Below, in pieces: positions 2,698 through 52,000 of a stretch of 64,000 bases of DNA. Numbering within the stretch: the stretch's first letter is position 1; every line of letters begins with the position of its first letter. Source of the DNA: Ophelia neglecta (taxonomy: Eukaryota); contig OZ260663.1 in assembly GCA_965285935.1 (NCBI GenBank), forward strand, positions 100,626,001 through 100,690,000, written 5' to 3'. A model generated the notes under the pieces. The model saw only the letters and a program-made list of their open reading frames with translations, made no database searches and had not been told where the DNA came from. The translations under genes were made by a program, and so were the position numbers.

Positions 2698-3946
2698 GTC
2701 TATTTTAATTGATGACACTGACAATCCGAACCCACAAAGACTCCCCCCAAAACAAACATCAAATACTTTATGAATGGCCACGAATGATACGATATATGAT
2801 TTTGTAATAGAGGTGTGCTGAGAAATTGAGGTTGATAAACCGGGTCTCGTTCACACTTAAAAGGGCACAAAAACCCAAACGGACACAAAGTGGACTTTTA
2901 CATCGAATGCGGAGACCATTTATTTGTTACCTTTCATTTTACATAGTCCCAGAAGAGACCAAAAGGTTTTTATCACTCAATGTACCTGGACCGGGCAGAC
3001 ACCAAGTGGTTAAACCAATCACTAAACCTGAGCCCAGTAGAGACCAAGTGTTTATTAAGACTCACAGTAACTAGGCCCAGCATGGACCAAGTGGATATTA
3101 CCACTCACTGGGCCGTATTTATATTTATAAAGCCAAAGTGACCAAAATAACTCCAAAAAGGGAAATAAATTTGTTTGGGTTTTCTCTGCATTTTAGGTTT
3201 TCTGGATGTTTTTAGGAAAGGAATAATTCATCAATAGTCTACCAATCACCTTACCACTGTGGTTTCTCTGAGTCCTGTGCTTCCAATAAGGCTTTGTTAC
3301 CCAGGAACCCATCAACATAGTCTATATAAACTGGTCGCCTGTCGTGTCCCACCTCTGGGTTATATATCTTGATCTGTTTATTCTAATGCTCTTTAAATTC
3401 TGAGCATAGTTAACACGGCATTAGAAGGATGTTTAGACTTGGGACATTACTTGATTTTTAATTATTGCAAGAAGTAAGGCTTGGCTACTCGGTAGGCGTA
3501 CATCATTATATATTACGGCGATACTGCTTAGACCTGTTTACTTTTTTTTTTATCTCGAACCGATGTTCAAGGAAAACTCATTGTTAAAATCATCATTTCA
3601 GTCTTAATAACAGGGGTTAGAATCCGCATTGGAAGTCTATAGGAAGCGACAATTTGCAAACCTTATCAAATTCTCAAATTATGTGCATTTTCAAATATAA
3701 ACCACTAAAATATAATGTCTGTCTCTATTTTAGCAGCTACAGGCCAGTACTACACAGATGGGATTTTGATACAAGCGAAAATTCAGTCTGGTTATCATAG
3801 CCTGTTTTTGTTCTGTGTGACAACATAGCTTATAAAACATTTCTGGTTAATGTATCAACAAGCCCGACAGTGAGTATTTTATGGCACCTTTATTCGTCGA
3901 CATGCATAGCTGTCACAACTGATATATAAAATGTTTTATAGGAAAG

Positions 3947-4010
3947 ATGGCGGCGTATGATCCACGTCATTCGGTGATAACAGACACTATGGCAAGTGAC
4001 CAATCGGAAG
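3947..4010 (+). CDS. NLR first coding exon (MAAYDPRHSVITDTMASDQSE)
   Basis: Acceptor TTTATAG ends 3941, AAGATGG Kozak-like ATG at 3947, donor G|GTAATT at 4011; phase 1 fits the next exon. The whole exon 3942-4010 is 69 bp and also open as a 1-1 internal exon. Confidence 0.65.
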
Positions 4011-28000: not shown

Positions 28001-31000
28001 TAACGAAAATGATCTTCCATGCGGACTCCTGGACATTACATCCGGCGACAAAAACGTCATCAGCGAGCTGGAGTACACAACCGCCTCGTTTGTTCATTTC
28101 ACAATCCAGGAATTTCTGACCGCCCTGCAAATTGCCATCACGTGGAAGCCAGCCGACATCAAAATGATAACCAGTCGTAAAGCCTCTCACAATTTTAACA
28201 TGGTTCTCCTGTACCTGTCAGGGCTTCTGGGAAATCCACTTGGAGGGAAGCTTATTGGAGCTATTGACGAGAATATATCACCGAAAACTCTTAGCAAGCG
28301 ACTTACCAAGCTGTTTGATACTTTGGTTTTGAAATATGAAGGACGATTTCGGTTCCTACCAACTCTCACCAAAAAAGGAAAAGACAACACTAAACTGGGG
28401 CGACTCCAGCTGCTTCGATGTGCGGCTGAGGGTAACCACAAAGGCATGATTAAAAAGATCGAGCGCTTAGTGCTAAAAGCAGAGGGGACGTTGGATTTGG
28501 CAGACATGCCTGGGGGGCTCCGCCCAGAGCATATGCAGGCTGTGGCTTTCTTTATTCAATGGACAAAGGCAATGCAAACTCTAAGGTAAGTCAACTGCTA
28601 AACACATTGTACTTATATTAATTTCAATGTAATTGCGGTGTGTTAGTCGATAGCAATGATTTACCGACTTTAGTTGTAAGGAAATAACTTAAATAATTTA
28701 ATTTTTTCGCATCTATTGACATTGTGTAGCGATATTGGCCCTTACATATTTAATTTCCAAATAGCATGATAGATGTTTTATTGCTTCTTGAGGGGTTATA
28801 TCCACTGTCCCCCGTTGATCGTCTTAAATCAAAGCTTAATTTATTTTATATAAACCGCTCTTGTGTGCTCGTAACTTTTCTGATGATCACTGCATGTCGA
28901 TTTACAAGTTGTATTTGCATCCCTTCATTATTAATGGACCAATTACTCCTATTTTTTCTTTATCCCTGGTATGTGAGCATTTATAACTGTGCGCATACTC
29001 TGTTTTCTATGGATATTGTCATTGCTTTGCTGTGAAAAGGAAGCTTTTCTCTGTATTTGCTGTTGCCATGCCCCCCCCCCCAGCCGCCCCCCCCCCCACA
29101 CACTCTGTTATTTTTTCTATGTGTTCAACATTTACAACGTTATTATGTATGAATCATACTGACGTTTATTTTCGTACGTTGAATCTAATCTTTACAGCAT
29201 AGTTTTTTAAATGTTTACCTTTGATGAACTCAATGGATTGTGTATGTGTTTGCAACTTGTAATCACCTGCCTTTATCCTTCCCAAGTGAGTTTGTCATCC
29301 CCCACACCCCCCCCCCCCCATCCACCCTTCACCCCCTATCCCGGTCATTGGCTATAAGGCCTTCAACACACACGAATGACCTAAGCTAATTCTTTCTGCA
29401 TTTTAACTGAGACAAACACCTCCAACGTGTCACAGCATTATATGACTGATGAACCTCCTACGTCTACTAGAAAGAGAAGGATGGCTATAGTACATCGTAG
29501 TCTCGAGTAGTCTGTCACGTGCCTTGGAAACAGTCTTCGGTATTCTCTCATATGGTCAGTGCGGAGGTCTGGCACATGTCTGGTGAACACGATTGGCTTC
29601 CTCGGCAGTGTTACACATGACTGGTGACCACACTGAGCACCCTCGGTAGACTTATACAAGAGTGATGACCACCTTTTGCTCCGTCGGTAGTTTGGCGCAT
29701 GACTTGTTAACCAGTAGGGCCACTCTGTTGGCTCCCTCGGCATGACTAGTCACATGACTAATGACCCTTCTTGACCCCCTCGGCTGTCTGACACATCACA
29801 TCCTTGGCTATCTCGGTAGCCTGACACACGACACATGGCTTATGACTCCCGTGGATCTCTTGGTAATCCGACACATGGCCAATCCACCCTCTAGGCTCCC
29901 TAGATAGTGTGACGAATGACTGTTGACTCCCGTGGCTGCCTTGGTAGTTTGACACATGACCAATCAATCCTCTTGGCGCCCACGGTAGTGTAACATATAA
30001 CTGCTGACCCCTTTGGCTGGCTCATTAGTCTGACACAGGACCTATCAACCCACATGGTTCCTATGGTAGTGTGACATATAACTGTTGAAACCCTTCGCTC
30101 CCTCGTTGTCTGACACATGACTGACAACCCTGTTGGGCTTTAGATAGCCTGACGCATGACTTGTTAATCTCTTTGATCTTACGTGCTCTGTCACATGACT
30201 GGTGAATCAACATAGCTCCCTCAGTTGTGTAACACACGACTTGGGACCACCCTTGGCTCCCTCGGTAGTCTGGCACATGACTGGTTGCCCCCTTCCCCCC
30301 TGGATCCCTCGGTATGCTGATACATAACAGGTGAGCCCCTTTGGCCACATCGGTAGTCTGATACATGATTTTTAAATATTTTGGCTCCTAAATAGTGAGA
30401 CCCATGACGTGTGATCCCCGTTGTAGTCAGGCACATGGCATGTACCCACCCCCCTCCGGCCCATCTGTAGTCTAACACATGACTGGTGTCCCCTTTGCTC
30501 CTTCGGTAGTCGAACACATGACTTGCGAACCCCCTTGGCCCCCTCGGATGTTTGACACATGACTGGTGACCCCATGACCCCATCGGTAGACTAACACATG
30601 ATTTACCCCCTTGACCCAAATGGACTCGGACTGGCTCCCTCTGCAGTCTGTAATATTACTCCTGATCCCCTTGGCTCCGTCTGAAGTTTGACACGCGACT
30701 GATGACCCCCTTTGGCTCCCTCTGTTGTCTGATACACGATTTGTGACCCTCTTTGGTTCTCTCGGTAGCCTGACACATGGCAGGTTACTCCTCTTTGTAA
30801 CTCGCGGTAGTCTGACGCGTATTTTATCAACCCCCTTAGCTCCCTCGGTAGTCTGACTTTTGACTGGTGACCCCCTTAACTCCCTCGGTAGTGTGACACA
30901 TTACCAATCAACCACCTAGGCTCCCTCGCTTATATGACACATTGCTGACCCCATTGGCCACTCGCCTGTGTCACATGACCAATCAATCCCCTTGGCCCCT

Positions 31001-34000
31001 CGGTAGTCCGACACATGACTGGTGGCGCCCTTAGCTCCCTTTGTAGCCTGATACATGACTGGTGATCCCCTTAGCTTCCTCGTAGTCTGTCACATGCCTG
31101 GTGATCCCCGGGGCTAACTCGGCAATCTGACCAACCGCTTTGGCCCGCTCTATAGTCTGACACATGACTGACGGCCCCCTCGGAATTCAGACACATGACT
31201 GATCAACCCCCTTGACCCCTTCGGTACTCAGACGCATGACATTTTTCCACTCGGTAGTCTGTCACATGACTGGTGATCCCGTTAGAAGGACCAAACCACC
31301 ACCACACAATCCCCCTTACCCCACCCCAGCCCCCAATCCCATAAATATCCATATGTCAGATATATATGACATGTGGGTAGGCTACGTTGTTTTTACCTGC
31401 AATGTATTATGATGCACTTAACTTGGTTGACCCCTAATGTTAACATGCTCAAATATGTTTGACCCGGGCTCTAATTCCTTTATTTACCCGCACTCAACGT
31501 GTCATAGGATATGAAGCAATTAATCTCAGACTTTACAATATTCTTGCAAGCAATACATTGATGTTACAAATCTCATGTGCTTAGGCCTACTATAGCCGTA
31601 TATATGCTGTGCTCCCCAAGTTGTGTGTTACTTGTTTATTTTTACACTTTAGAAATTGGGCTTGAATGTTTGTGGATTGTTTCCTCTCGAATTTGATAAT
31701 GACTTTTGCCAAACTATGATAAACAAAACTAATTTACCTTTGAAATGGCTGTGGTCACCCAATCCTCTCAATAATTCATATTATTATTTTAACGTTGGCT
31801 GTAACTTTATTTATCCTTGTTGATTTACAGGACCTCGGTAGAAGAAAACAAATGAAGTACCCACAGAACACGCTTTCATAATGATATTTGTGTCACTTGG
31901 TCATACGTATATGATTCAAATACATATATTTGCGATAGGCATAGTCAATACTTGCAGATTGGAGAAGCAGTACTGTGTCAGTTTGATGAGGATGATAACT
32001 CCCGAGAACCAGGGCCGTCTGGTACCTCTGTTAGACGGGTGTGTGTTAAAGAGAGGGGAGGACGTAGACACAGAGCGAGGTGGGGAGTTTGATCTCCAGG
32101 GTATGACACTGACGGTGGAGGACCTCCAAGGAGTGGCCCAGTATGTCACACACTCCACGGATATATCCCGCCTCATGTAAGTCAAATGAAGTTCCTGATT
32201 AACATATTCTTAGATTTTTTACACATGCTGTGATTCTACTTTGATGTCTTATTTCATGTTAATCGTTTTGTTCTACTATAGTCGCGCATTTCAATTCATT
32301 CCCATTTCTCAACCAATATTGATCACCAGTATATAGTAGGTCAGACTTTAGAAAATTCTTGCAAGCAATACATTGATGTTACAAATCTCATGTGCTTAGG
32401 CCTACTATTGCCGTATATATGCTGTGCTCCCCAAGTTGTGTGTTACTTGATTTTTTTTACACTTTAGAAATTGGGCTTGAATGTTTGGGGATTGTTTCCT
32501 CTCGAATTTAATAATGCCTTATATATATAATTATGCATTGTCTCCCTTCTATCAACTACTGGCTTTTGTTAAGTTTTACAGTTGCTATATTGTTAGAGCA
32601 TTCCTGGCTATAACTCTGGCATTCATAAAAAGGGATCATAAACACGTGCTTCACACGTGTCATATATATTAACCAAACAACATGTGTTCCACGGAGAGCG
32701 ATATAGAGTTAAGAGGCAAATGACAGTTTTGCCAAACTATGATAAACAAAACTAATTTACCTTTTAAATAGCTGTGGTCACCCAATCCTCTCAATAATTC
32801 ATATTATTATTTTAACGTTGGCTGTAACTTTATTTATCCTTGTTGATTTACAGGACCTCGGTAGAAGAAAACAAAGAAGTACCCGCAGAACACGCTTTCA
32901 TAATGATATTTGTGTCACTTGGTCATACGTATATGATTCAAATACATATATTTGCGATAGGCATAGTCAATACTTGCAGATTGGAGAAGCAGTACTGTGT
33001 CAGTTTGATGAGGATGATAACTCCCGAGAACCAGGGCCGTCTGGTACCTCTGTTAGACGGGTGTGTGTTAAAGAGAGGGGAGGACGTAGACACAGAGCGA
33101 GGTGGGGAGCTTGATCTCCAGGGTATGACACTGACGGTGGAGGACCTCCAAGGAGTGGCCCAGTATGTCACACACTCCACGGATATATCCCGCCTCATGT
33201 AAGTCAAATGAAGTACCTGATTAACATATTCTTAGATTGTTTACACATGCTGTGATTCTACTTTGATGTCTTATTTCATGTTAATCGTTTTGTTCTACTA
33301 TAGTCGCGCATTTCAATTCATTCCCATTTCTCAACCAATATTGATCACCAGTATATAGTAGGTCAGACTTTAGAAAATTCTTGCAAGCAATACATTGATG
33401 TTACAAATCTCATGTGCTTAGGCCTACTATTGCCGTATATATGCTGTGCTCCCCAAGTTGTGTGTTACTTGATTTTTTTTACACTTTAGAAATTGGGCTT
33501 GAATGTTTGGGGATTGTTTCCTCTCGAATTTGATAATGCCTTATATATATAATTATGCATTGTCTCCCTTCTATCAACTACTGGCTTTTGTTAAGTTTTA
33601 CAGTTGCTATATTGTTAGAGCATTCCTGGCTAAAACTCTGGCATTCATAAAAAGGGATTATAAACACGTGCTTCACACGTGTCATATATATTAACCAAAC
33701 AACATGTGTTCCACGAAGAGCGATATAGAGTTAAGGGGCAAATGACAGTTTTGCCAAACTATGATAAACAAAACTAATTTACCTTTGAAATGGCTGTGGT
33801 CACCCAATCCTCTCAATAATTCATATTATTATTTTAACGTTGGCTGTAACTTTATTTATCCTTGTTGATTTACAGGACCTCGGTAGAAGAAAACAAATGA
33901 AGAACCCACAGAACACGCATTTCATAATGATATTTGTGTCACTTGGTCATACGTATATGATTCAAATACATATATTTGCGATAGGCATAGTCAATACTTG

Positions 34001-37000
34001 CAGATTGGAGAAGCAGTACTGTGTCAGATTGATGAGGATGATAACTCCCGAGAACCAAGGCCATCTGGTACCTCTGTTAGACGAATGCGTGTTAGAGAGA
34101 GGGGAGGACGTAGACACAGAGCGAGGTAGCAAGCTTGATCTCCAGGATATGACACTGACGGTGGAGGACATACAAGGAGTTGCCCAGTATGTCAAACACT
34201 CCACGGATGTATCCTGTATCAAGTATGTCAAATGAAGTACCTATTTACCATATTCTTTCACTGTTTACACATACTGTGATTCTATAACTTTGATGTCTTA
34301 TTTCATGTTAATCGTTTTGTTCTACTATAGGCGCATTTATTTCATTTCCATTTCAACCAATATTGATCATCAGTATATAGTAGGTTTACGTCCAGGTCAC
34401 ATATATAGCTTTGCTCTACAAACCAATATCAGATAATTTTTATTACACTGTTCTGACTGATATTTGGCAGCTGTAGGGCACAGTGCACATGTTATTGTTA
34501 TCAAAGTTACAAATTCCAGCCCCATCGCTTCCCTCGGTATTATGAAACCTGACTGGTGAACATCCTTGGCTATCTCGATAGACAAACACATGGCTGAATA
34601 TTCCTCTTGGCTCCCTCGGCAGTCTGATACATGTAACATGATTGATTAACGCCTTTGGGCCCCTCGATAGAGTGACATGTGACGGGTGAATCCCTTGTGC
34701 CCTTCGGTGGTCTAACACATACTGGTAAACCTCCTTGGGACCTTCGGTAGTTTGACACGAATGGTTAAGCAGCTTGGCTCTGTCGGTAGTTTGACACAGG
34801 TTTGGTGAAACCCTTTTGCTCCCTCCGTCGCCTAATATAATATAATTAGTGTACCCCTTAGTCTCCTATGATTATTTGGCACATAACTGATGAAACACCT
34901 TGACACCCTCAGTAGTCTGACACATTACCGATCATCCCTCGATAGTCTTAAACTTGACGGTTGAACCCGCTAGGGCCCCGCGGGAGTCTGACATATGTTA
35001 AGTGAAACCCCTAGTTTCCATCGGCATTCTGGACCATGAAACATGACTGGTGAGCCCCCTTTGCTCCCTCCGTAGTCTGACACACGAATGGGTACCGCCC
35101 TCGCCTGTCTCGTAAGTCTGATACAGAACTTGTGAATCCTTTTGGCTCCCTCAGTTGCCTTGCACATTCCGTGTGTTCTCCTTCCCCTGCCTCGGACCCC
35201 CTTGGGATCCTCGGTATTTTGACAAATGTCAGGTGCCCCTTCTTGGGACGTTCGGTGTTTTAACACATGTCAGATAAATCCCTTGGAACTCTCGATATGT
35301 TAACACATGCCTGCAGAACAAGCCACCCTCCATTAAAGGCAGGTTCATGACTCGTGAACCGTGGCTTCCTCGGTGTTATTATACATGACTAAAGGGCCCT
35401 CTTGGCTCCCGCAATAGTCTGAAACATGACTTGTTAACCCACTTAGCTCTATCAATAGTCTTATTTATCATAGGCTGTCAACCAGACGAGATTCAGGCAG
35501 CACACGTGTGGAATTCGATTGGATCCTGGGCGAATGTTGATTTCATGTTCCGATCCATGTTTTCCGGATTCGAAGCGAAAGCTTGTGTATAGAAAAAATT
35601 AGACTGATGCTGGACTTGTATCAGAAACACTATTTGCTATTGAAACAGAGCTAATATTTGCTTGTACTTTATGCCGCGTGCTTCGCGTCTGCCGCTCCCT
35701 TGCGATTAATCAAGCTTTGTACAGAAGTTAAGCAGTTTACAGTGTAACGGTAGTAGAAATAGAAAAATAAAATGATCTTATAATGGTTCAGTAAGAAGAA
35801 AAACCAAAGCCAATCATTTATTGTAAATATTACGCACAACCTGTAAAAATAAAATTTCAATTATAGTAGCAATACACTGAAGGTATAAATTAATGAAAGA
35901 AGTAGAATAAGCAAGGCATTGGTGAATAAGCTAAGAATGCTCATTTGCCCCATTGCAGGTAATTTACAATAAGTAATTTACGAGTTCAATAAGAGGGCAT
36001 AAACTTTCTGCCACCAGATACTGGAAACAGACAGTAACCAATAAAACGACAACGTTTTTCATGCAGAGGGTAATTCCGGAATCAAAATACGCCTTCAAAT
36101 GCAAAGCTTAAAACAAGCCTAGTGGTAATATTTAGTCGATTATTACTGACGTAGACGTTTAAACGCTTAGACATTTTGCTATGATAATAAATAGTACACA
36201 TCCATGTGGGTTACTTAACTGTTACTACTACTCTTTGGCTATTCAAACCATGTGCACCCATTTATAGGATGTGGAAACACTTAATGTATGCATTAGGGTC
36301 CCCAATGTTGAAACCCATAGGGACTTGATATTGAGGCAAATTGGTTTGGGGACCAATTGGCATAATTATATATGGTTATAGTTTCCAGTGGCTAAACCAA
36401 GAACAAAGGTTTTGTCATAGCTGCACAAACGGCTGATCTAGGTAGTCCCATTGGTTGTAATTTTATATACGACCAGATAGACTGACATTAAGACTGACAA
36501 ACACACATACGCATCATGCACTATTTCACATATGTATATTTACATATTAGTGACAGCGGTGAAACCCAGGTCATAGTGGGCTAGAGCTGAGTGATCTTTG
36601 AGCAACTGACACGAACAAATATGCGACAATAATGACCAGCCCCACAATTGGACCATATAATTGTACAAAGCGAAGTTGTTATCACCCTTTAGGCACACAT
36701 ATGCGATGCTTTACTCGATGTTCTTTAATTTAACTTGACTTTTAATCTCGAGCCTCGAATATTCTTATCGATATTCTGCAAAAGGACACCCTCGATCACA
36801 AGTATGCTGTAGTCTGTTTCTGTTTATCGCTGCTATACTCACGTTTGAACTTTGCACTTGTGAATGTTTGCGCGCGATCCTTCTAAGATCTGAGATATCA
36901 TTTTTGTCGATATTTAGGTTAGCATATTTTATGCTAGGCCCTCTGTGCATTGTGTGATCTCAGTGAGATAGTGTATCAGTGTTTATGGAAATTGGCATAC

Positions 37001-40000
37001 TATGTTTTACAACATACTATTCTTCTTTTGTGGTCTCACATTCTATAAATGTCCTCAAAAGACACTATGTCTTTATATAACAGTGACATATATATTATCT
37101 AAATTGATGGGAATAAGGCGTATCTGACAGAAACATAGTCAATAGCGATGCCTAGATTCCTCTTATGTGACTTACATATTATACCCTTAACTTCCTTCTG
37201 ATTTGCCTTCCAGCTTGAGAGGGAACAATATTACAGATCAGGGGATGGAGAGTCTGGGCTCCGCTCTGAAGGTCACAACATCCCTGAAGGATCTTGTGTA
37301 AGTCTAATATCCACATTCATCGAATTGTGCAAAAAACACGTATTGTCTATGACCTTATTGTTCTTTAACAGCAGACTCGTGCCACAATAAATTACGTTAT
37401 ATATGAGTAACCCGTGTAAAAAGACGAGCATAAGACGAATCTGACCGAATCCAAATCCAAGGAGACGAGTTGATTCCTGTTATGTAACTAAATACTATAC
37501 ACATCACTCTAAATTATTATTTACTTTCCAGCTTAAGCCAGACCAATTTAACAGATCAGGGTGTTCAGTGGCTGGCTTCCGCTCTTGGGGTGAATACCTC
37601 TTTGATTGTAATAAGGTTAGTATCACACTGTCTACATTCAGCTCTCTCCAAAAGAAGATATTTTTTAAGTACGAGGATTCATTGTCCGTATTGGCATTGA
37701 AACATCGCAGTTAGTGTTAGATTAATATGTGTTTTTCATCTTGTATATTCTTTGTATGCAACCCGATAATAGTATGTAACTTACTTCTTTGTGTTATGTG
37801 CGTAAACAAGGAATTTTCAAGAAGTAACGAACTGGTATATCTAACATTATTTACAGGGATTTATTTAGAATTCGGACAATATTTATATTAGCATTTATTA
37901 CATAATTTACTTTAAAGAGTGTGTTTTATAGGCCTGAATATGGAAGGATGATAGCGTATCGGCTGGGCTATGTACTGGCCTTCCCCTTGGCAATAGGGAA
38001 TTTTTATTCCATTGTTCTGACTGATATTTGACATCTATAGGGCACAGAACACCCCTCCGCCGTTTGCGGTGGACCACAAAATCCAACATTGTATATTGCT
38101 CTATGTTGTCCTCGCCAGGCGCAACCAGCGTGTTATTTTTTTTTACTAGTTTGCTTTGTGCTTTGACTTTCACCATGGAACACTGTAGACAACATTGGAA
38201 GTAATAGTTATCTTTTTTATTTCTTTACTTATTTACACTTTGGAAACTGGGGATTAATGTTTGTGGATTGTTTTATATAAAAATAACATGGCGTTATATG
38301 GGTTCAGTAAGAAGTAAAAGCAGATTTTTTTTGTAAATATTACACACCATATATTAAAAAATAAAATTCATAAAGTATAATAGCAATACACTGAATGTAT
38401 AAATTAATGAAAGGAGTGGAATTATCAAAGCATTTAGGGAAGAAGCTAAGAGTGCTTCTTTCATTACAATTAATTTGTAATAAGCTCTTTACAAGTGCAA
38501 TACGAGAGCATAAACAGTAATGGCTCATATAGTTGCGAATTTTCTGCCACACGAACATAGCCTCCGATACAGGAAACAAACTGTGAGCAATAAAACAACA
38601 ACGTTTTTCATGCAGCAGGAAATTCGGTAAATGAAAATACTCTGTCCGTCACATGCAAAGCTTAAAACAAACTTGGAATAATAATTTGTTGTTTATTGCT
38701 GACGAAGACGTATAATATCGTGGACGAAGTTCATGACAATGTAATCACGTTTGATAATAAAACTGACACTTTGATGCCGGCTACTTAACTTTTATCTAGC
38801 TACTCAAACCATGTGCACCCATAAATAGGACGTGGAAAACCTTAATTTATGTATAAGGGGCCCTTATGTTCAAACCCATAGCAAATTGATATTGAGGCAA
38901 ATTGTATTTGAACCAATTTGCTTAAGTAAATGTGGCTATATTTGCCAGCTGCTAAACCAAGAACAAAGGTTTTTATCACAGTTGCACAAACGGCTGATCT
39001 AGGTAGTCCCATTGGTTTTTTTTTATATACAACCAGATAGACTGACATAAAGACTGACAAACACACATACACATCAGTGCACAGCGGTTAAACCCAGGTC
39101 ATAGTGGGCGAGAGCTGAGTGGTTTTGTAGCAACTAACACAAACAAATATGCGACAATAATGACCAGCCCCACAATTTGACCATATAATTGTACAAACGA
39201 AGTTGTTATCACCCTAGGTACACATATGCGGTGATTTACTTGTATTTTTTAACTTATCTTGACTTTTAATCTCGAACCTCGAATATTCTTATCGATATTC
39301 TGCAAAAGGACACCCTCGATCACAAGTATGCTGTAGTATGTGTCTGTTAATGGCTGCTATACTCACGTTTGAACTTTGCACTTGTGAATGTTTGCGCGCG
39401 ATCCTTCTAAGATCTGAGATATCATTTTTGTCGATATTTAGGTTAGCATATTTTATGCTAGGCCCTCTGTGCATTGTGTGATCTCAATGAGATAGTGTAT
39501 CAATGTTTATGGAAATTGGCATACTATTTTTTACAACATACTATTCTTCTATTGTGGTCTCACATTCTATAAATGTCCTCAAAAGACACTCTGTCTTTAT
39601 ATAACAGTGACATATATATTATCTTATTTGATGGGAATAAGGCGTATCTGACAGAAACATAGTCAATAGCGATGCCTAGATTCCTCTTATGTGACTTACA
39701 TATTATACCCTTAACTTCCTTCTGATTTGCCTTCCAGCTTGAGAGGGAACAATATTACAGATCAGGGGATGGAGAGTCTGGGCTCCGCTCTGAAGGTCAC
39801 AACATCCCTGAAGGATCTTGAGTAAGTCTAATATCCACATTCATCGAATTGTGAAAGAAACACGTATTGTCTATGACTTTATTTTTCTTTAACAGCAGAC
39901 TCGTGCCACAATAAATTATGTTATATATGAGTAACACGTGTAAACAGACGAGCATATGACGTATCTGACCGAATCCAAATCCAAGGAGACGAGTTGATTC

Positions 40001-43000: not shown

Positions 43001-46000
43001 GCCCGCTGTAATCTCAAGGATTTATCATTGAATATTTTGATATACGAGGATATCACCGCGAAAGACGCAGAAATTCTTCGCACGCTGAAGAGCGGCATTG
43101 GTACGTCTAACGTAGAGAAGGCATGGGCGATAAAGGGCAAGGTGTTTGCCAGTGTCGGTGGCAGAGTGTCCGTGGTGAAGGCTGATAACCTACATGCCAT
43201 TCTTAATGGCTGTGCTTGTGATAATACGCCATCTATATTACACGCATCATTGGAATCATTATACACGGCACAGGTCAGGTATATAAGCCTATGGTTTATG
43301 CTTTGTCGTTATATATTGGAATTTATTAATGGTTCTTCTGGTCCCCCCCCCCCCACCCTCCAATCACACATACACACACACTCACCCAAATGGGTCTGTG
43401 TGACCATTGCTTTTCTTTTTTCTTTTTTCAATTGCTTTGCATTAGTTTTCAAGCACTAGCATGCACTATGTATTCGTTGTTTTTCCTGCTGGATGTAAGT
43501 ACTGATTCTTCCAGCATCCAAGGCCAGAAAGTAAAAACATATTTTGCCTATGTACATATTATTTTGTTCTTATAGTGTTTATTCCCTTCTCACTTTGTTC
43601 CATGGCTCTATTAAAGTGTAGAACGTGTTACAGATGTGTCCTCTCACATTCTTATCACATTATGTGCTCTTTTTGTGATTTACCTACCCATGTTAACTGT
43701 TTGCCGGAAGTTGGCAGAACCGACTCTATTTACACTGAGCATGACGCTAACACATGGTTATGTTCTGCATGCTCAACAGACATTTTCTCTTTCAACCATT
43801 TTATTGAAGACACAGATTTTCTCCTTTTACTTAAGGAGTCTGTTAATGACTTTAAGGCATCAATTGAAGACTTGCAAGGTATTTTGTTTGACCCATTTGA
43901 TTTTAATGTAATTGTAAATTCACCTTTGTGATCCAGATCCAGACATCCGATACTTTAACTCAATGGGTTTGATTTCACCTTCTAATTGCAATTATTACAT
44001 GGAGGATTCATTTATCCAAAAATGTAATGATTTTGGCATTCAAGGGGAGGGTTTCTCTGTGGTCCATTTAAATATCCGAAGGATCCAGAAGAACCTTTAC
44101 GGCTGTGTAAATTATCTTGAGGGATTGCATTTTGACTTTTCCATTATCGGGCTATGAGAGACCTGGCTGAATGGGGACAATTTCGACCTTTTTGACAGTT
44201 TTAATGGAACCCTTGAGACTATCTTTGTTGAGATTGAGGGCAAATCTATCGGCAAAACCAAAAATTCTTTTGTTAATTGATAAGATCTCGACAGCGCTTG
44301 ACCGTGGCGACTGTGTCTTAGGCCTCTTTCAGGATTTTTCGGAGGCCTTCGACACAGTCGACCACGATATTTTGATCTTGAAGCTTGAGAAATACGGCAT
44401 ACGGGGTATGGCCAGTCAGTAGGCTAGGAACTACTTGCGTAATAGAAACAGTTTGTTGATTTAGATGGGTCCCTTTCAGCACTTTTACATATGTCGCACG
44501 GTGTCCCACAGGGTTCAATTCTCGGACCACTTCTCTTCCTACTTTATATAAATGACATGTCCAATGTTTCTAATACATTGTTTCTTTTGTTATTTGCCGA
44601 TGCCTCAAGTGATATTATCACGGGAAGTTATATCGATGACATGATTGCTGCCATGAATGTCGAAATTGAAAAAATTACACTGTGGCTACAAATTAATTAA
44701 TTAACCCTCAATGTGAAGAAACACCCACTTCATTATATTTCATAATCCAAAAAGTAAGATACTTTTTACCCGTGACCTTGTTATTAAGGTTAAAAAGCTG
44801 GAACATGTCAAATCAACTAAATTTCTTGGTGTTACAATTGATGAATCATTAAACTGGAAAGAACACATTCTTACAACTAAGGGTAGAGTATCACGCAGCA
44901 TCGGAATTATTTGAAGAGCTAGGAATTTGTTCAATAGGGATACTCTACCCACCCTGTTTTATTCTTTCATCTACCCCTACATTAGTTACTGCATTGAGGT
45001 CTGGGGTAGGGCATTTGACAAATACTTGGCTCCCCTTAAAAGACTTTAGAAACGAGCACTTCATTTGGTGACTGGATCTTCGAGAAACTCTCCTTCTTTG
45101 CCTCTTTTTATTGATACGAATATTCTCCCACTATGTGAAATCTACAATATAAGTCTCTAGCTTATTATCTATAAATTGTTTAATGGTGTGCTCCAAGAAG
45201 TACTCTCTTCACTTTTCTCAATTCTGATGTCTAAAATCACAAAACTAGACAATCATCCAATCTTCATTTATTACCTCCCAGAACTTCAACTATGCAACGC
45301 ATTCCCATTTACCAAGCAGCCTTGTCCTACAATTTGAGCCTTGATCACATTGATTATAATTGCTCACTACACTCCTAGTTCTTCACTAAAAAGCTATTAT
45401 TATTTCAATCTCTGTAGTTCTATTCATTAAGTCTCGTGCCTTGACAAATGCTGGTGTCACCTCAGATCCAAAGTTTTCTATTTCTGCAGCACTGAGATAA
45501 TCACAAATGTCACTATCCAGAATATTGTGAATCCAAACACAGATATTTATCCGAATGGATGTTTACACATACTACTTTACAAAAATTATTCCTCTACTTC
45601 GCCAAAATAGGGCTAGAAAGGAACAATTTTCTCGAGCATTCTCACAGTGTGTCACCTCTGTTCATTCGTGAATCATTCTCATCGTTATCTGATATATGAC
45701 TGGTGACCCCCCTTGACCCCTCGATAGTCTGACGTATGACTCGTTTACACTCTTGGCTCCCTCGATAGTCTGATACATGACTGGTGACCCCCTTAGCTCC
45801 CTCGCTAGTCTGATACATGACTGGTGACACCCATTGCTCCGTCGGTGGTCTGTCACATGACTGGTGAATCCCCTTGTCTCCCTCGGTAGTCTCATACATG
45901 ACTGGTGATCCCTCTTGACCCCCTTGGTAGTCTGACGTATGACTTGTTTACACTCTTGGCTCCCGGGACAATGTGACGCATGACTGGTGACCCGGTTTGG

Positions 46001-49000
46001 CACCATCGCTAGTCTGTTACACGAATCGTGACCCTCTTTGGCTCCCCAAGTAGCTAGACATACGGCAATTGATCCTCTTTGGCTCCATCGGAGTCTGCCA
46101 CATGGCAGGTGAGCACCTTTGTTCCCTCGGTAATTTGAGACATGACTAACCAACCCCCTAGGCCCCTCGGTCGTCTTACACATCGCTGATGACACCCCGT
46201 AGCCTCTCTGTAGTTAACACATGACTGGAGACCCCCCTTTTCCCTCTATAGTCTGACACATGTGAAACCCCTTGGCTTCCTAGGTTGTCGGATATCTGGC
46301 TGTTAAATCCCGTTGACACCCGTTGGACACATGACTGAAGGGGCTCTTGGCTCCCTTGGAAGCCTTTCACATTACTGGATACTCCCTTGCCTGCCTCGGT
46401 ATTCTGATACATGACTGGAAACCCCTCGGCCTGCCTCGGTAGTCTGGCACATGGCTGGTAACCTCTCTTGGCTCCCTCGGTAGTCAGACACATGATTAAT
46501 CAACTCTTTTGGCCCATCGATAGTCATGCATCACATGTTTATCCTCTTGACCCCTCAGTCGTCTGATACATAACTGGAAACCCCATTAGCTCCTTCGGTA
46601 GTCTAATACATGAGTGATATCCCCCCTTGTCGCCCTCTGTAGTTTTACGCAGGACTTTTTTATCCTCAGGGCCCCTCTGCAGTTTGGTACATGGCAGGTG
46701 ACCCCCTTGGCTCCCTCGGTAGTTAGACACATGACCAATCAACCCCTAGGTTCCCTCGGTAGTCTGACCCATGACTGATGACACCCCTTGGCTTCTATGT
46801 AGTTAACTCATGACTTGTGACCCCTTTAGCTCCATAGGTAATATAAAAAGTTACAGGTGACATCCCTCGGCTCCCTTGGTAGTCTGACACATGACTTGCT
46901 AACCCTCTTGCACCTCTGCACATGACTGGCGACCTCCTTGAATCCCTAGGTAGTATGACACATGAGAGGTGAACCCCTTGTCCTCTCAGGTTGTCTTATT
47001 CATCACTAGTAACCCCCTTACCTCCCTCGATAGTCTGATACATAACTGATGATCCCCTTTGGCTTCATCGGTAGTTTGACGCATGGCTTGTTTACCCTCA
47101 GGACCCCTCTCTGGTTTGATCTATGACTGACAAAACCCCCGTGGCTGCCTCGGTAGCATGTTACATGGCTGGCCCCCATTCGTTCCCTCAATGGATTGAC
47201 CCTTAAGTGGTGCTTCCCCTGGCTCCATCGGTAGTAAATTGCATGACTGAAGAACCCATTTAACTCCCTCGGTGGTCTGACATATGGCTGGGGACACGCA
47301 TTTGCTCCCTCGGCAGTCTCATACATGACCCATCAACCCCCTTGGCCCCCTCAGTAGTCTTGCTTACACTCATGGCCCCTCTGCAGTGTGATACATGGCA
47401 GGTGACACGCTTTCGCTTCCTCGGTAGTCTGACACATGGCAGGTGACCCCATTAGCTCCCTTGGTAGTGTGACACATGACAATCAACCCCCTAGGCCCCT
47501 CTGTAGTCTTAAACATGACTGGTGAACCCCCTTGGCATCCTCGGTAGTCTGACACCTGCCTTATCAACCCCCCCCCCCTGGTTCCCTCGGTAGTCTGACA
47601 CATGACTGGTGAACCCCTTGTTCCCTCAGTAATCTGGTACATGACTGGTGACCACACTGAACTCCATCGCTAGTCTTATACAAGACTGATTACCCCCTTT
47701 AGCTCCGTCGCTAGAATAACGCATGTCTTGGTTACCCGTAGGGCTACTCTGTAGTTTGACACAAGGCTTACGAAGCCCCCTTAGCTCCCTCGGTAGTCTG
47801 ATACATGACTGCCCCCCCCCCCTCCTCTCTCCCTCTCTTGGCACCCTCGGTAAGATGATACATGACTTGCTACCCCCCGTGGCCGCCTCGGTAGTATGAC
47901 GCGTGACTTGTTTACCATCTTGTCCCCTCTGTAGTCTAATACATGACTGGTAAACCCTCTTTGCTCATCCGGTAGTCTAACACATAGCTGGTGACCCCCG
48001 TGGCTCTCTGGGTAGTCTGACACATGCCTAAACTATACCCTTAGCTCCCTCGGTAGTGCGGCAAGGGACAGTTGGCCCCCGTGGATGCCTTGGTAGTTTG
48101 ACACCTGACCAATCATGCAGGTTGGGATAATGTTAAATGCTATGTGGGCAACCCCCTTGGCTCCCTCGGCAGTGCGACAAAGGACAGTTGGCCCCCTTCG
48201 CTCCCTGGGTAATCTGGCACATGACTGATGGCCCTCTATTGCTCCCGCAGAAGGCTGACACACGACTGACAAACCCCGTTGACTGGTAACCCTCCTTGGC
48301 TCCCTCGGTAGTGTGACACATGACCAATCAACCTCCTAGGCTCCCTCGCTATGCTCACATATACCTGCTGACCCCCCTTGGCTCCTCAGTGGTCTATAAT
48401 ATGACCAATCAACCCCCTTCACTCCCTCTTTAGTCTGATACATGACTGGTGGCCCACTTTGGCTTTCTCGGTAGTCTGTCACATGACTGATGACCCCCTG
48501 ACCCCCTCGGTAGTTTGTCACGTGACTGGTGGCCCCTTTTGAGGGAGCCAAGCTGTTCCCTGTTCTCTGGCAGCATTCTCTCACCATAGTCGGTGAGAAA
48601 ACTGAGTTTAAAAAATAATTAACGACAGTTTATTACATCAACACAATTGTACCATCTGAATAAAGGGTTAAATAGTATTAATGCCAATGTGAAGCAACCT
48701 ACTCCCTACCCCCCCCCCCCACCCCACCCCCCAACATATCTCTCCCAGTTCAATCCAGTAAGTCTCTGACCTTTAGATACTAGTTGATTATCCAATGGCA
48801 TGTACATACTAGTTTATTTTGCTCCCCCTATAAAGAACAGTGTATTCTTTTTGACTGAATGGGTTTGATGTTATCCTCCAGACCCAATCAATTGCGCTGA
48901 AAATGCACTGAATACCGGTGGCCTATTTATTCAATTACTTATTTTAAAGAGCCTGCCGCAGTTTTGATGACATTAATAGTATCTCCGTATATTTGCCAAG

Positions 49001-52000
49001 GTGTTCCCTGGTCTTTCTGGCACTGACCTGTATGCTTTGGACCACAGGTGCGCAGAGCGCCTGTCCGCTGCTGCCTCTGTTTAACTCGTCATGCATGGGT
49101 GGCCGCGGGAGGCCGTGTCGCGTGTTTGCGCGCATCGTATGGCTCTCTGCCTACTTACCAGTCTCTTGACGTTTTAGACTTGGTGACTCATCGGACAAAT
49201 CGCATCTTATATCAGTTAATTATAGGTATAGTAACTCCCTCATCTCATCATCTCATATTTTATCCCACGCATATTTGTAAATACTGCCTTAATGCATTAT
49301 ATGGAAAATACCCAGTTTAAGCACTAGGCTTCTGTAAAATCCAAATTATGTATAATAATATGTTTAAACCAGGTTTTTCCATTTGACAGTTTTATTGTCT
49401 ATATGAAACATATAAAGTATTAATGTGATCGAACGTAATCCTCAAAATTGATCAAAACTCAAGTTAATATGAAAAAATAAATATATTGACCCATAGCAGT
49501 TCATAGTGAATTTGACAGTAGCAATATTGTGTATGCTTATGTACACGCTGTCCGTGGAGGTATTCACAATACAATTCCCTAACGCAGCAGAGGCAATGCC
49601 TTGCACAGACCCCGACCCTTAACTGTGGATGCAAGAAGATCCCCCCCCCCCCTCCCACCACAAAGGGAATACAATTCCAAACCTCTAAGCGAGCATTAAT
49701 GTCTTAAAACGTCAATAGGCAGCAACCCCTTTGGCTCCCTCTGTTGTCTGATACACGATTGGTGACCCCCTTTGGCTCCCTCTGTTGTCTGATACACGAT
49801 TGATGACCCCCTTTGGCTCCCTCTGTTGTCTGATACACGATTGGTGACCCCCTTTGGCTCCCTCTGTTGTCTGATACACGATTGGTGACCCCCTTTGGCT
49901 CCCTCTGTTGTCTGATACACGATTGGTGACCCCCTTTGGCTCCCTCTGTTGTCTGATACACGATTGATGACCCCCTTTGGCTCCCTCTGTTGTCTGATAC
50001 ACCATTGGTGACCCCCTTTGGCTCCCTCTGTTGTCTGATACACGATTGATGACCCCCTTTGGCTCCCTCTGTTGTCTGATACACGATTGGTGACCCCCTT
50101 TGGCTCCCTCTGTTGTCTGATACACGATTGGTGACCCCCTTTGGCTCCCTCTGTTGTCTGATACACGATTGGTGACCCCCTTTGGCTCCCTCTGTTGTCT
50201 GATACACGATTGATGACCCCCTTTGGCTCCCTCTGTTGTCTGATACACCATTGGTGACCCCCTTTGGCTCCCTCTGTTGTCTGATACACCATTGGTGACC
50301 CCCTTTGGCTCCCTTGGGAGCCTGACACATGGAGGGTGACCCCCCTTTGGATCTCACGGTAGTCTGACACTTCGAGTTATCAACCCCCTAAGCCCGGTAG
50401 TGTGACTCTTGACTGGTAACCCCCTTGGCTCCCTCTGTAGTTTGACACATGACCAATCAACCTCCTAAGCTCGCTCGCTAATCTGACACATACCTGCTGA
50501 CCCCCCTTGGGTCCTCAGTAGGCTAGTCTTTAACATGACCAATCTACCCCCTTCGCTCCCTCTTTAGTCTGATACATGACTGGTGACCCACCTTGGCTTG
50601 GTTTCCTCGGTAGTCTGTCAGATGACTGGTGAGCCTGTTAGAGGGAGCCACTCTGTTCCCTGACAGCATTCTCTCACCTAGTAAGTGAGATAACAGAGTT
50701 TAAAAAAATAATAAATGACAGTTGATAACATCAACACAATTGTACCATCTGAAAAAGGGTTAAATAATTTTAATGCCAATGTGAAGCAACCTACCCCCCC
50801 CCCCCTCCCCCTAGACGTAACTCTCTAATTCAATCCAATAGGTGCCTGACCCTTTAAACACTAGTTGATTATACAATGGCATATACAAAATAATTTTTGC
50901 TCCCCCTATAAAGAACAGTGTATTCTTTTTGACTGAATTGGTTTGATGTTATCCTCCAGACCCAAACAATTGCGCTGAAAATGCACTGAATACCGGTGAC
51001 CTATTTATTCAAATACTTATTTTAAAGAGCCTGCCGTAGTTTTGATTACAATAATAGTATCTCCGTATATTTGCCAAGTTGTTCCCTAGTCTTTTATGGC
51101 ACTGACCTGTATGCTTTGGACCACAGGTGCGCAGAGCGCCTGTTCGCTGCTGCCTCTGTTTAACTCGTCATGCATGGGTGGCCGCGGGAGGCCGTGTCGC
51201 GTGTTTGCGCGCATCGTATGGCTCTCTGCATACTTACCAGTTTCTTGACCTTTTAGACTTGGTGACTCATCGGACAAATCGCATCTAATATCAGTTAATT
51301 TTAGGTATAGTAACTCCCTCATCTCATCATCTCATATTTTATCCCACGCATATTTGTAAATACTGCCTTAATGCTTTATATGGAAAATACCCAGTTTAAG
51401 CACTAGGCTTCTGTAAAATCCAAATTATGTATATTAATATGTTTAAACCAGGTTTTTCCATTTGACAGTTTTATTGTCTATATGAAACATATAAAGTATT
51501 CATGTGATCGAACGTAAACCTCAAAATTGATCAAAACTCAAGTTAATATGAAAAAATAAATATATTGACGCATAGCAGTTCAAAGTGAATTTGACAGTAG
51601 CAATATTGTGTACGCTTATGTACACGCTGTCCGTGGACGGTATCCACAATACAATTCCCTAACGCAGCAGAGGCAATGCCTTGCACAGCCCCGACCCTTA
51701 ACTGTGGATGCAAGAAGATCCCCCCCCCCTCCCACCACAAAGGGAATACAATTCCAAACCTCTAAGCGAGCATTAATGTCTTAAAACGTCAATAGGCAGC
51801 AACCCCTGCAGCGTAGGCTACTGGGGACACTGCCTTCAACCGGCGCAGGGCAGATCAATGATTAATATATTACCAATGGTTTCTTTCTTCTTACAGACTG
51901 GAGGAACAATATTGTATTGGTCTGATGAGACTTATAACTCCCGAGAACCAGGCCCGACTGGTACCACTACTGGACACCGCTGTCCTCAAGTCTGGTCACT

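What the first reader, a model, noticed from the sequence alone, without database searches (positions are those of the whole stretch)
29440..50640. Switch-region-like layout: same-orientation minisatellite arrays precede the sensor exon blocks
Seen: order is NACHT-[S1]-T1T2T3-[S2]-L1-L4-[S3,S4]-T4-6-L5-L7. All arrays are the same strand-skewed (C-rich sense, G-rich antisense) ~40-bp family, 0.9-2.9 kb long, and none occurs in the CARD half. Recombination between any two arrays would delete or duplicate whole blocks in frame; S1xS3 would put NACHT directly onto the second T3-LRR cassette. One duplication breakpoint (49730) falls exactly in this repeat. The analogy to immunoglobulin switch regions is mine. 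Inference: repeat-guided germline or somatic swapping of NLR sensor cassettes.
Basis: inference. Interest (0 to 1): 0.75.

Follow-up and report, generated by a model that had tools for sequence, protein, structure and literature searches.

The report
Recombination-prone minisatellites in NLR gene introns
A 40-letter DNA repeat found only inside the introns of one family of immune-receptor (NLR) genes sits between their sensor exon blocks and has repeatedly been a breakpoint when those blocks were duplicated, deleted or exchanged in the germ line; nothing supports antibody-style switching in body cells.

Summary
All sensor exons are phase 2-2 (219, 84 and 585 nt).

The repeat is not dispersed. 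All 72 of 72 genome-wide matches to its core lie 2.2-28 kb downstream, on the same strand, of 20 NACHT paralogs.

The sensor half has a different history from the NACHT exon: it is 85-98% identical in paralogs whose NACHT exon is only 64-68% identical in protein.

Of 9 rearrangements I could place, 8 have at least one end in an array and 4 have both. One of these is a sharp, in-register S3/S1 hybrid array on another chromosome. Another is a read-supported S3-tail/S4-tail junction that no assembled paralog explains. Other rearrangements and exchange-tract ends lie outside arrays, and the array-free CARD region is mosaic too.

The switch-region analogy fails on the features I tested: the sense strand is C-rich, WGCW is depleted, and there is no APOBEC_N hit. 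Somatic events could not be tested.

Verdict: germline, array-associated cassette turnover in an NLR family. This is a new variant of a known kind.

The parts
26832..28585 (+). NACHT exon: open frame from 26832, listed ORF 26988-28589, donor GTAAGT at 28586, ends in phase 2
   Evidence: Pfam NACHT 1.9e-24 and NOD2_WH 6e-7. Sequence read.
29440..31285 (+). S1, a ~40-bp minisatellite array in intron 1
   Evidence: nhmmer and TRF. Collinear at 96-100% in paralog B and at 96% in paralog G.
31526..34385 (+). Tandem 1021-bp T units (about 2.8 copies, 93-96% alike) carrying exons T1 31958-32176, T2 32980-33198 and T3 34004-34222 (219 nt each, phase 2-2)
   Evidence: Self-blast. Exon ends.
34530..35467 (+). 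S2, an array of the same family
   Evidence: nhmmer. It holds the breakpoints W35139 and W35392 of paralog B and about W35235 of K, P and Q.
35726..40371 (+). Two ~2.52-kb L units with 84-nt LRR exons L1 37214-37297, L2 37532-37615, L3 39738-39821 and L4 40056-40139 (phase 2-2)
   Evidence: Self-blast; exon scan and alignment.
42238..45398 (+). Non-LTR (LINE) reverse-transcriptase fragment. It is an insertion present in W and paralog D and absent in the C9, C and G paralogs.
   Evidence: Pfam RVT_1. Absence in paralogs.
45689..48540 (+). S3, the largest array. It is a positional orthologue in paralogs, and its units are individually recognisable.
   Evidence: Collinear at 95% over W46689-49418 with paralog K.
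48541..49725 (+). U, a unique 1.2-kb block. It contains a ~240-bp dispersed element at about 49131-49371.
   Evidence: 469 first-look candidates; hits on many contigs for query positions 591-831.
49726..50408 (+). S4a, a young homogeneous 41-bp array (14.4 copies, 97% matches)
   Evidence: TRF. Similar variant units occur in paralog Q (87-94%).
50409..50641 (+). S4b, a copy of the S3 tail (48279-48493) at 87.6%
   Evidence: Self-blast.
50642..51807 (+). U', a copy of U (92%)
   Evidence: No assembled paralog is more than 84% identical to W50500-51100.
51897..52481 (+). T4-T6 in one 585-nt exon (phase 2-2) with an internal 186-bp tandem repeat
   Evidence: It is 83-95% nt identical (hits of at least 500 nt) in paralogs of all NACHT subfamilies that carry arrays.
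57561..57814 (+). L5 (57561-57644, weak donor) and L6 (57731-57814): 84-nt LRR exons separated by an 86-nt intron

Best explanation
The arrays are an old, degenerate ~40-bp minisatellite family that lives only in the introns of one CARD-NACHT-LRR (NLR) gene family. It occupies fixed intron positions between the NACHT exon and the sensor exon blocks.

The arrays are inherited with the sensor half of the gene, and they move with it when that half is exchanged between paralogs.

In the germ line they behave as break-prone, recombinogenic stretches:
- Some breaks are repaired against another array, in register, giving hybrid arrays and duplicating or deleting whole in-frame T/LRR cassettes.
- Other breaks are joined to unique sequence.

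Together with ordinary unequal crossing-over between the 1-kb T units and 2.5-kb L units, and with patchy gene conversion, this yields paralogs with different cassette numbers. It also lets sensor halves be shared across diverged NACHT scaffolds.

Shown here: exclusivity of the repeat to the family, positional orthology of the arrays, the mosaic histories, and the junctions. Inferred: that the arrays cause the excess of breakpoints rather than merely tolerating them, and that the outcome is useful for receptor diversity.
For: (1) Exclusivity.
- A 34-nt core with up to 3 mismatches gives 72 matches in 762 Mb; the reversed control gives 0.
- All 72 of 72 lie 2.2-28 kb downstream, on the same strand, of 20 of the 52 NACHT paralogs entered.
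- A DNA search with S4a gave 122 matches in 21 places, all next to NACHT hits when checked by eye.

(2) Positional orthology. S1 and S3 are collinear unit by unit with paralogs at 84-100%.

(3) Decoupled histories.
- T4-6 block identity does not track NACHT identity in 22 paralogs: rho = -0.12, p = 0.59, means 89.3% against 90.2%.
- Paralog K on contig C12 has NACHT 64% aa / 73% nt, but T unit 95%, U 94% and T4-6 95%.
- The two members examined of the 80-82% NACHT subfamily have 0 arrays and only 36-54% aa T-like exons.

(4) Junctions.
- K 12424 to about 12612 matches S3 (W47398 to about 47590), and K 12588-12760 matches S1 (W30247-30419) at about 98%. The switch falls inside a shared stretch of about 16 nt.
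- Intron 1 of paralog C runs from S1 units into S3-tail units. From that point it is 96-97% identical to the internal junctions of its threefold [T-S2-L-S3] cassette.
- K, P and Q join S2 to S3 with no L block.
- Paralog B has breakpoints W35392|W31433 and W35139|W49103.
- The C9 paralog joins W46900 to W49162.
- A read joint 48389->50524 has side 138 and 11 shared letters. No assembled paralog is more than 84% identical to its U' side.

(5) Tally. 12 of 18 endpoints fall in arrays against 28% expected. 8 of 9 events have at least one end in an array, and 4 of 9 have both.
Against: - Arrays are not required. Paralog D's deletion (W28748-33951) has both ends in unique DNA. T-unit and L-unit copy changes use their own homology.
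- The 5' ends of the high-identity tracts lie in a T unit in P and Q and about 43 bp before the T4-6 exon in M.
- The array-free CARD region is mosaic as well: 94% identical to a paralog whose NACHT is 67%.
- Arrays inside exchanged tracts are less similar (80-93%) than the neighbouring exons (94-98%). They do not look like the centres of conversion.
- The event tally is post hoc. It rests on paralogs that I chose, and its endpoints are not independent.
- The array share differs between paralogs, so 28% is only a rough baseline.
- No hybrid junction in a paralog was checked against reads, so assembly error inside arrays is not excluded.
- The read joint could come from an unassembled paralog rather than an allele.
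Confidence: 0.65

Rival explanations
1. Passive passengers. The arrays are neutral intronic minisatellites that were simply copied along with the gene family. Breakpoints fall in them because they fill much of the introns, and because alignments break down in repeats. They have no causal part in cassette turnover.
For: - Native arrays of distant paralogs are only about 75-78% like those of W, as expected for unconstrained DNA.
- Same orientation follows from inheritance alone.
- Several events and tract ends lie outside arrays.
- The CARD region is mosaic without arrays.
Against: - 12 of 18 endpoints and 4 of 9 two-ended events fall in arrays, against 28% and 8% expected.
- The K junction is in register within a shared stretch of about 16 nt. 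That indicates homology-guided exchange rather than a random break.
- Five junctions are placed to within a few bases (and the read joint), so alignment failure does not explain them.
Confidence: 0.2
2. Somatic, switch-like recombination. In immune cells, transcription through the arrays leads to breaks and array-to-array joining. This deletes cassettes in each cell, as in immunoglobulin class switching.
For: Only the layout supports this: same-orientation repeat arrays in the introns ahead of each in-frame exon block. One junction between array tails is present in reads.
Against: - The sense strand is C-rich (27-43 C-runs per kb against 2-10 G-runs per kb; skew -0.13 to -0.21). Ig switch regions have a G-rich non-template strand (recalled knowledge).
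- WGCW is at 2-10 per kb in arrays against 15.5 per kb in the non-array intron.
- There is no APOBEC_N match in the genome (other deaminase families were not searched).
- The joint made it into contigs of 2 of 3 runs. Contigs drop rare variants, so it is a frequent, heritable-type variant.
- Every hybrid found is fixed in the assembled germline genome.
Confidence: 0.03
3. RNA-level role. On the pre-mRNA each unit offers a CTGAC branch-point-like motif, a C/T-rich tract and TAG. The arrays could then act as decoy 3' splice sites, or as platforms for poly-C or polypyrimidine-binding proteins that decide which in-frame cassette is included. This is compatible with the best explanation.
For: - The motif content of the consensus unit was read directly. 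The meaning of the motifs is recalled, not tested.
- All cassette exons share phase 2-2, so skipping any block keeps the frame.
- The arrays lie immediately ahead of the blocks.
Against: - There is no RNA data at all.
- Native arrays drift to about 75% identity.
- Whole arrays are lost in intact-looking paralogs: D lacks S1, and the 80-82% subfamily has none.
- Both points argue against sequence constraint.
Confidence: 0.1

Closest known systems
Immunoglobulin class-switch (S) regions
   Same: Kilobase-scale tandem repeats, all in one orientation, sit in the introns ahead of exchangeable in-frame exon blocks. Joining two arrays deletes what lies between them.
   Different: - Here the sense strand is C-rich, not G-rich, and WGCW is depleted.
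- No APOBEC_N homologue was found.
- All junctions seen are germline.
- The properties of S regions are recalled, not taken from a call.
Zebrafish NLR-B30.2 family: gene conversion acting differently on NACHT and C-terminal modules (PMC4852459; I saw the abstract and passages; supplements not seen)
   Same: The NACHT exon splits the family into distinct groups, while the C-terminal sensor modules are shared across groups. Each domain lies on its own exon, and the NACHT exon is the large one.
   Different: The passages I read mention no family-specific intronic minisatellite. Here the exchanged half carries such arrays, and some junctions lie in them.
Sea urchin SpTransformer (Sp185/333) genes flanked by GA/GAT short tandem repeats (PMC8634487; I saw passages)
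   Same: This is an immune multigene family in which flanking tandem repeats are proposed to promote duplication, deletion and conversion through genomic instability.
   Different: There the repeats are 2-3-nt microsatellites between genes, and the genes are not NLRs. Here a 40-nt minisatellite lies inside introns, between exon cassettes, and is restricted to the family.
Unequal crossing-over and conversion in plant NLR clusters (search listing only; otherwise recalled)
   Same: LRR copy number and chimeric genes arise by germline non-allelic recombination.
   Different: In plants the LRR-coding repeats themselves usually supply the homology. Here non-coding intronic arrays supply part of it.
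Hypervariable minisatellites as germline recombination hot spots (recalled; no paper read)
   Same: The unit size is tens of bases, the arrays are degenerate with recognisable variant units, and in-register unequal exchange yields hybrid arrays.
   Different: Classic minisatellites are scattered loci. This family is confined to one gene family and sits at cassette boundaries.

Membership tests
Immunoglobulin-type switch region | Tandem-repeat arrays, in one orientation, in the intron ahead of each exchangeable exon block | tested here: met
   Four arrays, all on the + strand, lie ahead of T1-3, L1-4 and T4-6.
Immunoglobulin-type switch region | G-rich non-template (sense) strand that favours R-loops (feature recalled) | tested here: not met
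   The sense strand has GC skew -0.13 to -0.21, with 27-43 C-runs per kb against 2-10 G-runs per kb.
Immunoglobulin-type switch region | High density of WGCW/AGCT deaminase hot spots (feature recalled) | tested here: not met
   WGCW is at 2.2-10.2 per kb in arrays against 15.5 per kb in the non-array intron. AGCT is at 1.1-3.2 per kb against 2.9 per kb.
Immunoglobulin-type switch region | An AID/APOBEC-type deaminase in the genome | tested here: inconclusive
   PF08210 (APOBEC_N) gave 0 matches, with 2 candidates scored. Other deaminase families were not searched, and the search works exon by exon.
Immunoglobulin-type switch region | Somatic deletional joining in immune cells | not testable with these tools
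   Only contigs of 3 runs from one sample were available, with no tissue contrast.
Recombinogenic minisatellite | Tandem units of tens of bases, in arrays of 0.5 kb or more, with variant units | tested here: met
   Periods are 39-41 nt. Arrays are 0.9-2.9 kb here and up to 9.2 kb in paralog M. Within-array matches range from 61% to 97%.
Recombinogenic minisatellite | In-register hybrid arrays or unequal exchange between arrays | tested here: met
   The K S3/S1 junction lies within a shared stretch of about 16 nt. The read joint 48389->50524 has 11 letters that fit both sides. The S1/S3 hybrid of paralog C has a 520-bp ambiguous zone.
Recombinogenic minisatellite | Length or structure polymorphism between alleles in a population | tested here: inconclusive
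   There is one candidate allelic variant lacking 2,134 bp. It comes from a single sample, and an unassembled paralog is not excluded.
NLR (CARD-NACHT-LRR) | NACHT NTPase domain | tested here: met
   PF05729 at 1.9e-24 (86.8 bits, cut-off 26.7), plus NOD2_WH.
NLR (CARD-NACHT-LRR) | N-terminal CARD | tested here: met
   PF00619 scores 27.3 bits (cut-off 23.9) for 2154-2543. The match is weaker, at 19.7 bits, for 5226-5582.
NLR (CARD-NACHT-LRR) | C-terminal leucine-rich repeats | tested here: inconclusive
   The 84-nt exons encode 28-residue units with an N-x-T-D-Q-G...L pattern. The pattern was judged by eye against a recalled LRR motif. No profile search was run on these short exons. The T units have no Pfam match.
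NLR family with module-wise gene conversion (zebrafish type) | NACHT groups stay distinct while sensor modules are shared across groups | tested here: met
   NACHT is 64-68% aa (73% nt) identical, against 85-95% nt for the T and T4-6 blocks. There is no correlation in 22 paralogs.

The most novel reading that the evidence does not exclude
The 40-bp arrays may be maintained as dedicated homology adapters. Ordinary intron sequence between diverged NLR paralogs is saturated. The shared minisatellite would then be the only long homology left. It would let sensor cassettes, arrays included, be copied or crossed over between diverged NACHT scaffolds, even on other chromosomes, always in frame. On this reading a non-coding repeat family has been recruited as the recombination grammar of an invertebrate innate-receptor repertoire. 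The same grammar might also be used somatically.
Probability: 0.2. Interest if true: 0.8.

Novelty: new variant of a known kind. Interest (0 to 1): 0.55.

Why it matters
Large NLR repertoires of invertebrates are thought to diversify by duplication, unequal crossing-over and conversion. The DNA features that steer these events are rarely pinned down.

Here a repeat family that is private to one NLR family marks the boundaries of in-frame sensor cassettes. It carries identifiable hybrid junctions, and its unit-by-unit signatures allow each exchange to be traced.

This makes three questions directly testable with long reads:
- How often do cassettes move?
- Are arrays true hot spots?
- Does any of this happen in somatic cells?

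It also gives annotators a practical marker: the repeat flags the members of this family that carry it.

Tried and rejected
- Cutting units out by an anchor motif failed because too few units were recovered. I replaced it with TRF consensus units per array.
- (DNA alignment) used wrong locus coordinates through my own slip. Its result is not used; one search repeats the comparison correctly.
- Whole-library protein searches with the NACHT exon found only distant relatives: at most 36% identity over long stretches, 49% for two short fragments, and at most 27%. They gave no full-length model for exon mapping, so I mapped exons from frames, splice motifs and paralogs.
- Pfam found nothing for the T exons.
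- A single-sequence AlphaFold model of the T4-6 exon was poor (pLDDT 51). I did not use it for a fold search.
- Transposon origin of the repeat is rejected. There were only 55 first-look candidate places, and 72 of 72 core matches are NLR-linked.
- Coding arrays are rejected. The unit is 40-41 nt, and the sense consensus holds TGA and TAG in all frames (read). The antisense ORFs are a by-product of a stop-free repeat.
- Selective constraint on the unit sequence is rejected. Arrays of distant paralogs outside the exchanged tracts are only 75-78% like those of W.
- The ORFs in paralog M's intron turned out to be a different, 28-bp minisatellite.
- Most joints have sides of only 20-47 letters. 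At least one (46046->46685/46689) reproduces a structure seen in paralogs K, P, Q and C. I count these as paralog contigs, not variants.
- Rows dropped before the counts:
  - T4-6 hits under 500 nt.
  - The hit at C5:102207595 (93%), which has no NACHT partner.
  - For T1, all but one unit per paralog, and hits without a listed partner.
- The 9 events come from 11 paralogs that I picked by their identity patterns (5 read over 11-40 kb, 6 only in parts), plus the read joint. They are not a random sample.
- Paper searches listed no paper on intronic minisatellites in animal NLR genes. Only titles and abstract openings of the listed papers were seen, and supplements were closed.
This call repeats it with that field added.

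Full report
WHAT IS THERE

The window holds no N. It is G000:C5:100626001-100690000 of a 762-Mb assembly.

A + strand gene begins with CARD-coding ORFs: 2154-2543, its duplicate 4799-5188, and 5226-5582 (Pfam CARD). It continues with one large NACHT exon (open frame 26832-28585; NACHT 1.9e-24, NOD2_WH).

Downstream I mapped exons from open frames, splice motifs and paralog conservation:
- T1 31958-32176, T2 32980-33198 and T3 34004-34222 (219 nt each)
- L1-L4 at 37214, 37532, 39738 and 40056 (84 nt each, one 28-residue LRR-like unit per exon)
- one 585-nt exon with three T-like repeats, 51897-52481
- L5 and L6 at 57561 and 57731

Every one of these exons starts with one base of a split codon and ends with two. 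Any block can therefore be removed or repeated without breaking the frame.

No RNA run exists for this stretch in the index, so the gene model remains a prediction.

THE ARRAYS

nhmmer with three S3 units finds matches only on the + strand. They merge into S1 29440-31285, S2 34530-35467, S3 45689-48540 and S4 49726-50641. Nothing above chance lies in 1-29438 (TRF).

Consensus units of the arrays where TRF found a 38-43-nt period (3 of 5 array pieces here, 11 of 12 in the paralogs tried) are nearly the same 40-mer. Old arrays are degenerate (61-70% matches between units). S4a (49726-50408) is young (97%).

The sense strand is moderately C-rich: skew -0.13 to -0.21, with 27-43 C-runs per kb.

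- A LINE fragment (42238-45398) lies between L4 and S3.
- A 1.2-kb block U lies between S3 and S4.
- A copy of U, called U', lies between S4 and the T4-6 exon.

The duplication 48279-49730 / 50409-51807 does end where S4a begins.

THE REPEAT IS PRIVATE TO ONE NLR FAMILY

A DNA search of the whole genome with S4a gave 122 matches in 21 places (40 of 55 candidates scored). A protein search with the NACHT exon gave 81 scored hits of 229 candidates.

A pattern search with a 34-nt core and up to 3 mismatches gave 72 matches; the reversed control gave 0. All 72 of 72 lie 2.2-28 kb downstream, on the same strand, of 20 of the 52 NACHT paralogs with at least 53% identity.

Same orientation follows from inheritance inside the gene and carries no extra weight.

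ARRAYS ARE OLD AND POSITIONAL

- In paralog B (NACHT 95%), S1 is collinear with W at 96-100%.
- In paralog G, S1 is collinear at 96%.
- S3 follows the same unique flank (W41213-42237, then W45399-45688) in the C9, C and G paralogs. Those paralogs lack the LINE.
- Units are individually recognisable, so array segments can be traced like unique DNA.
- Arrays outside exchanged tracts in distant paralogs are only 75-78% like those of W. I see no constraint on the unit sequence.

THE SENSOR HALF HAS ANOTHER HISTORY THAN THE NACHT EXON

The T unit, U and the T4-6 block match paralogs at 83-98% nt (hits of at least 430 nt) whatever their NACHT subfamily.

In 22 paralogs the T4-6 identity is unrelated to NACHT identity: rho = -0.12, p = 0.59. 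The means are 89.3% for 8 paralogs with NACHT at least 90% and 90.2% for 14 with NACHT below 70% (dropped rows are listed under Tried and rejected).

Paralog K on contig C12 is the extreme case. Its NACHT is 64% aa / 73% nt, yet its T unit is 95%, U 94% and T4-6 95%.

Two members of the 80-82% NACHT subfamily have 0 arrays in the 10 kb downstream, and their T-like exons are only 36-54% identical. Arrays therefore travel with the sensor half, not with the NACHT tree.

This pattern is known from the zebrafish NLR-B30.2 family, where it is explained by gene conversion acting differently on NACHT and C-terminal modules (PMC4852459, abstract and passages).

ARE ARRAYS THE BREAKPOINTS?

I read 11 paralogs at the sequence level. 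Five were read over 11-40 kb (D, M, K, P, Q). Six were read only in parts (B, C, G, the C9 paralog and two members of the 80-82% subfamily).

Events with array ends:
- K carries a hybrid array. K 12424 to about 12612 follows S3 (W47398 to about 47590). K 12588-12760 follows S1 (W30247-30419, about 98%). The switch lies inside a stretch of about 16 nt common to both. Upstream of it K is 82-92% like W, and downstream it is 92-99% like W.
- Intron 1 of paralog C runs from S1 units (to W30136/30711) into S3-tail units (W47645-47954). From there it is 96-97% identical to the internal junctions of its threefold [T-S2-L-S3] cassette. A 520-bp zone in between cannot be assigned.
- K, P and Q join S2 (about W35235) to S3 (W45970) with no L block.
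- B has a duplication junction W35392|W31433 and a deletion W35139|W49103.
- The C9 paralog joins W46900 to W49162.
- In W's own U duplication, the copy 48279-49730 starts inside the S3 tail.

Events and tract ends outside arrays:
- D lacks W28748-33951, with both ends in unique DNA.
- Copy numbers of the T units (W 3; D, K and P 1) and of the L units (W 2; D 3) change through the units' own homology.
- The 5' end of the high-identity tract lies within a T unit in P and Q.
- In M it lies about 43 bp before the T4-6 exon.
- The CARD region has no array, yet it is 94% identical to a paralog whose NACHT is 67%.

Counting the nine placed events (including the read joint described under READS below):
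- 12 of 18 endpoints lie in arrays, against 28% expected from the arrays' share of 28586-51896.
- 8 of 9 events have at least one end in an array.
- 4 of 9 events have both ends in arrays.
- The binomial P values are 0.0008, 0.015 and 0.004.

These numbers are post hoc, come from paralogs I chose, and use a rough baseline. I read them as a clear tendency, not a law.

Several events join an array to unique DNA. This looks more like breakage in arrays with varied repair than like pure homologous exchange.

READS

Only three runs of one sample hold the stretch. They are kept as contigs, and none is RNA.

I laid them on 46000-51950. Fifteen joints are listed and 14 more are not shown. Most have sides of 20-47 letters, and at least one copies a paralog structure.

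One joint stands out: 48389->50524.
- It skips 2,134 bp (U plus S4a).
- It has 138 letters on the shorter side, and 11 letters fit both sides.
- It lies on contigs of 664 nt (X1) and 539 nt (X2), with 5 + 6 and 5 + 2 differing letters.
- It is not seen in X3.
- Both ends lie in array tails.

No assembled paralog is more than 84% identical to W50500-51100. The contig is therefore an allele or an unassembled copy.

It is S3-tail-like on one side and U'-like on the other. That pattern fits an exchange between the two copies.

Contigs cannot show rare somatic events, so the somatic question stays open.

THE SWITCH-REGION ANALOGY

The layout resembles switch regions, but the tested features do not:
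- The sense strand is C-rich. Ig switch regions are G-rich on the non-template strand (recalled).
- WGCW is at 2-10 per kb in arrays against 15.5 per kb in the non-array intron.
- There is no APOBEC_N match (other deaminase families were not searched).

I therefore do not file the arrays as switch regions. The claim that they work somewhat like them holds only in the germline sense.

COMPARISON AND NOVELTY

Known:
- NLR families evolve by duplication, unequal crossing-over and module-wise conversion.
- Tandem repeats have been proposed to destabilise an invertebrate immune gene family, SpTransformer (PMC8634487, passages).

What I did not find in two paper searches (listings only) is a minisatellite family private to an animal NLR family, sitting at cassette boundaries, with traceable hybrid junctions.

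EARLIER NOTES OF THIS SCAN

- One note describes the 62-73-residue repeat modules of this family and their varying number. This agrees with what I saw for T units.
- Another reports fast-evolving last LRR exons and orphan gene ends.
- Another calls the genome annelid. I did not test that.
- The scan had not noted the minisatellite before.

LIMITS

- The exon model has no RNA support.
- Hybrid junctions in paralogs were not checked against reads.
- The genome search scores only its best candidates, so its counts are lower bounds.
- Supplements of the papers were closed.

Noticed in passing
window 9493-25770: A Ty3/gypsy-type LTR retroelement lies in sense orientation in the intron between the CARD exons and the NACHT exon. 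Its structure is LTR-body-LTR-body-LTR (7,677-bp period, 99.8% identity; LTRs 9493-10417, 17170-18094, 24846-25770). The gag-like, RT, RNase H and integrase ORFs are separated by stops. I observed it only.
   Followed up: partly
window 29-5314: A tandem duplication of 2.64 kb at 99.7% carries a CARD exon (2154-2543 and 4799-5188). Only 10 places in the genome match the CARD region. Some belong to paralogs with a distant NACHT exon, so the N-terminal half is mosaic too.
   Followed up: partly
L035 5847-7855 (G000:C5:558049-560057): Paralog M has a different, 28-bp minisatellite (72 copies, 85% matches) in the same intron. It lies between a small 40-bp array and a 9.2-kb homogenised 41-bp array. 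This paralog has no first T/L cassette: NACHT is followed only by arrays and then the T4-6 exon.
   Followed up: partly
window 51923-52334: A 186-bp tandem repeat lies inside the T4-6 exon (62 residues per unit, 95%). Paralog matches start at query offsets 1, 116 or 302, so the number of in-exon units varies between copies.
   Followed up: partly
window 57480-57857: A 170-bp tandem unit consists of an 84-nt LRR exon plus an 86-nt intron. The donor of the first copy reads TT, or a shifted GT, so this exon may be skipped or shortened.
   Followed up: no
window 58130-58440: A G-rich stretch (GC skew +0.24) with 15-nt and 28-nt repeats follows L6. The matching place in paralog M is expanded to about 1 kb.
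   Followed up: no
window 49131-49371 (and copy about 51210-51450): A dispersed element of about 240 bp lies inside U. There were 469 first-look candidates, and 80-83% matches occur on many contigs. Two deletions end at or near its edge: W49103 in paralog B and W49162 in the C9 paralog.
   Followed up: partly
G000:C5:102204400-102209420: A copy of U and the T4-6 block (93-94%) has no NACHT hit upstream in the list. It may be an orphan 3' gene half.
   Followed up: no
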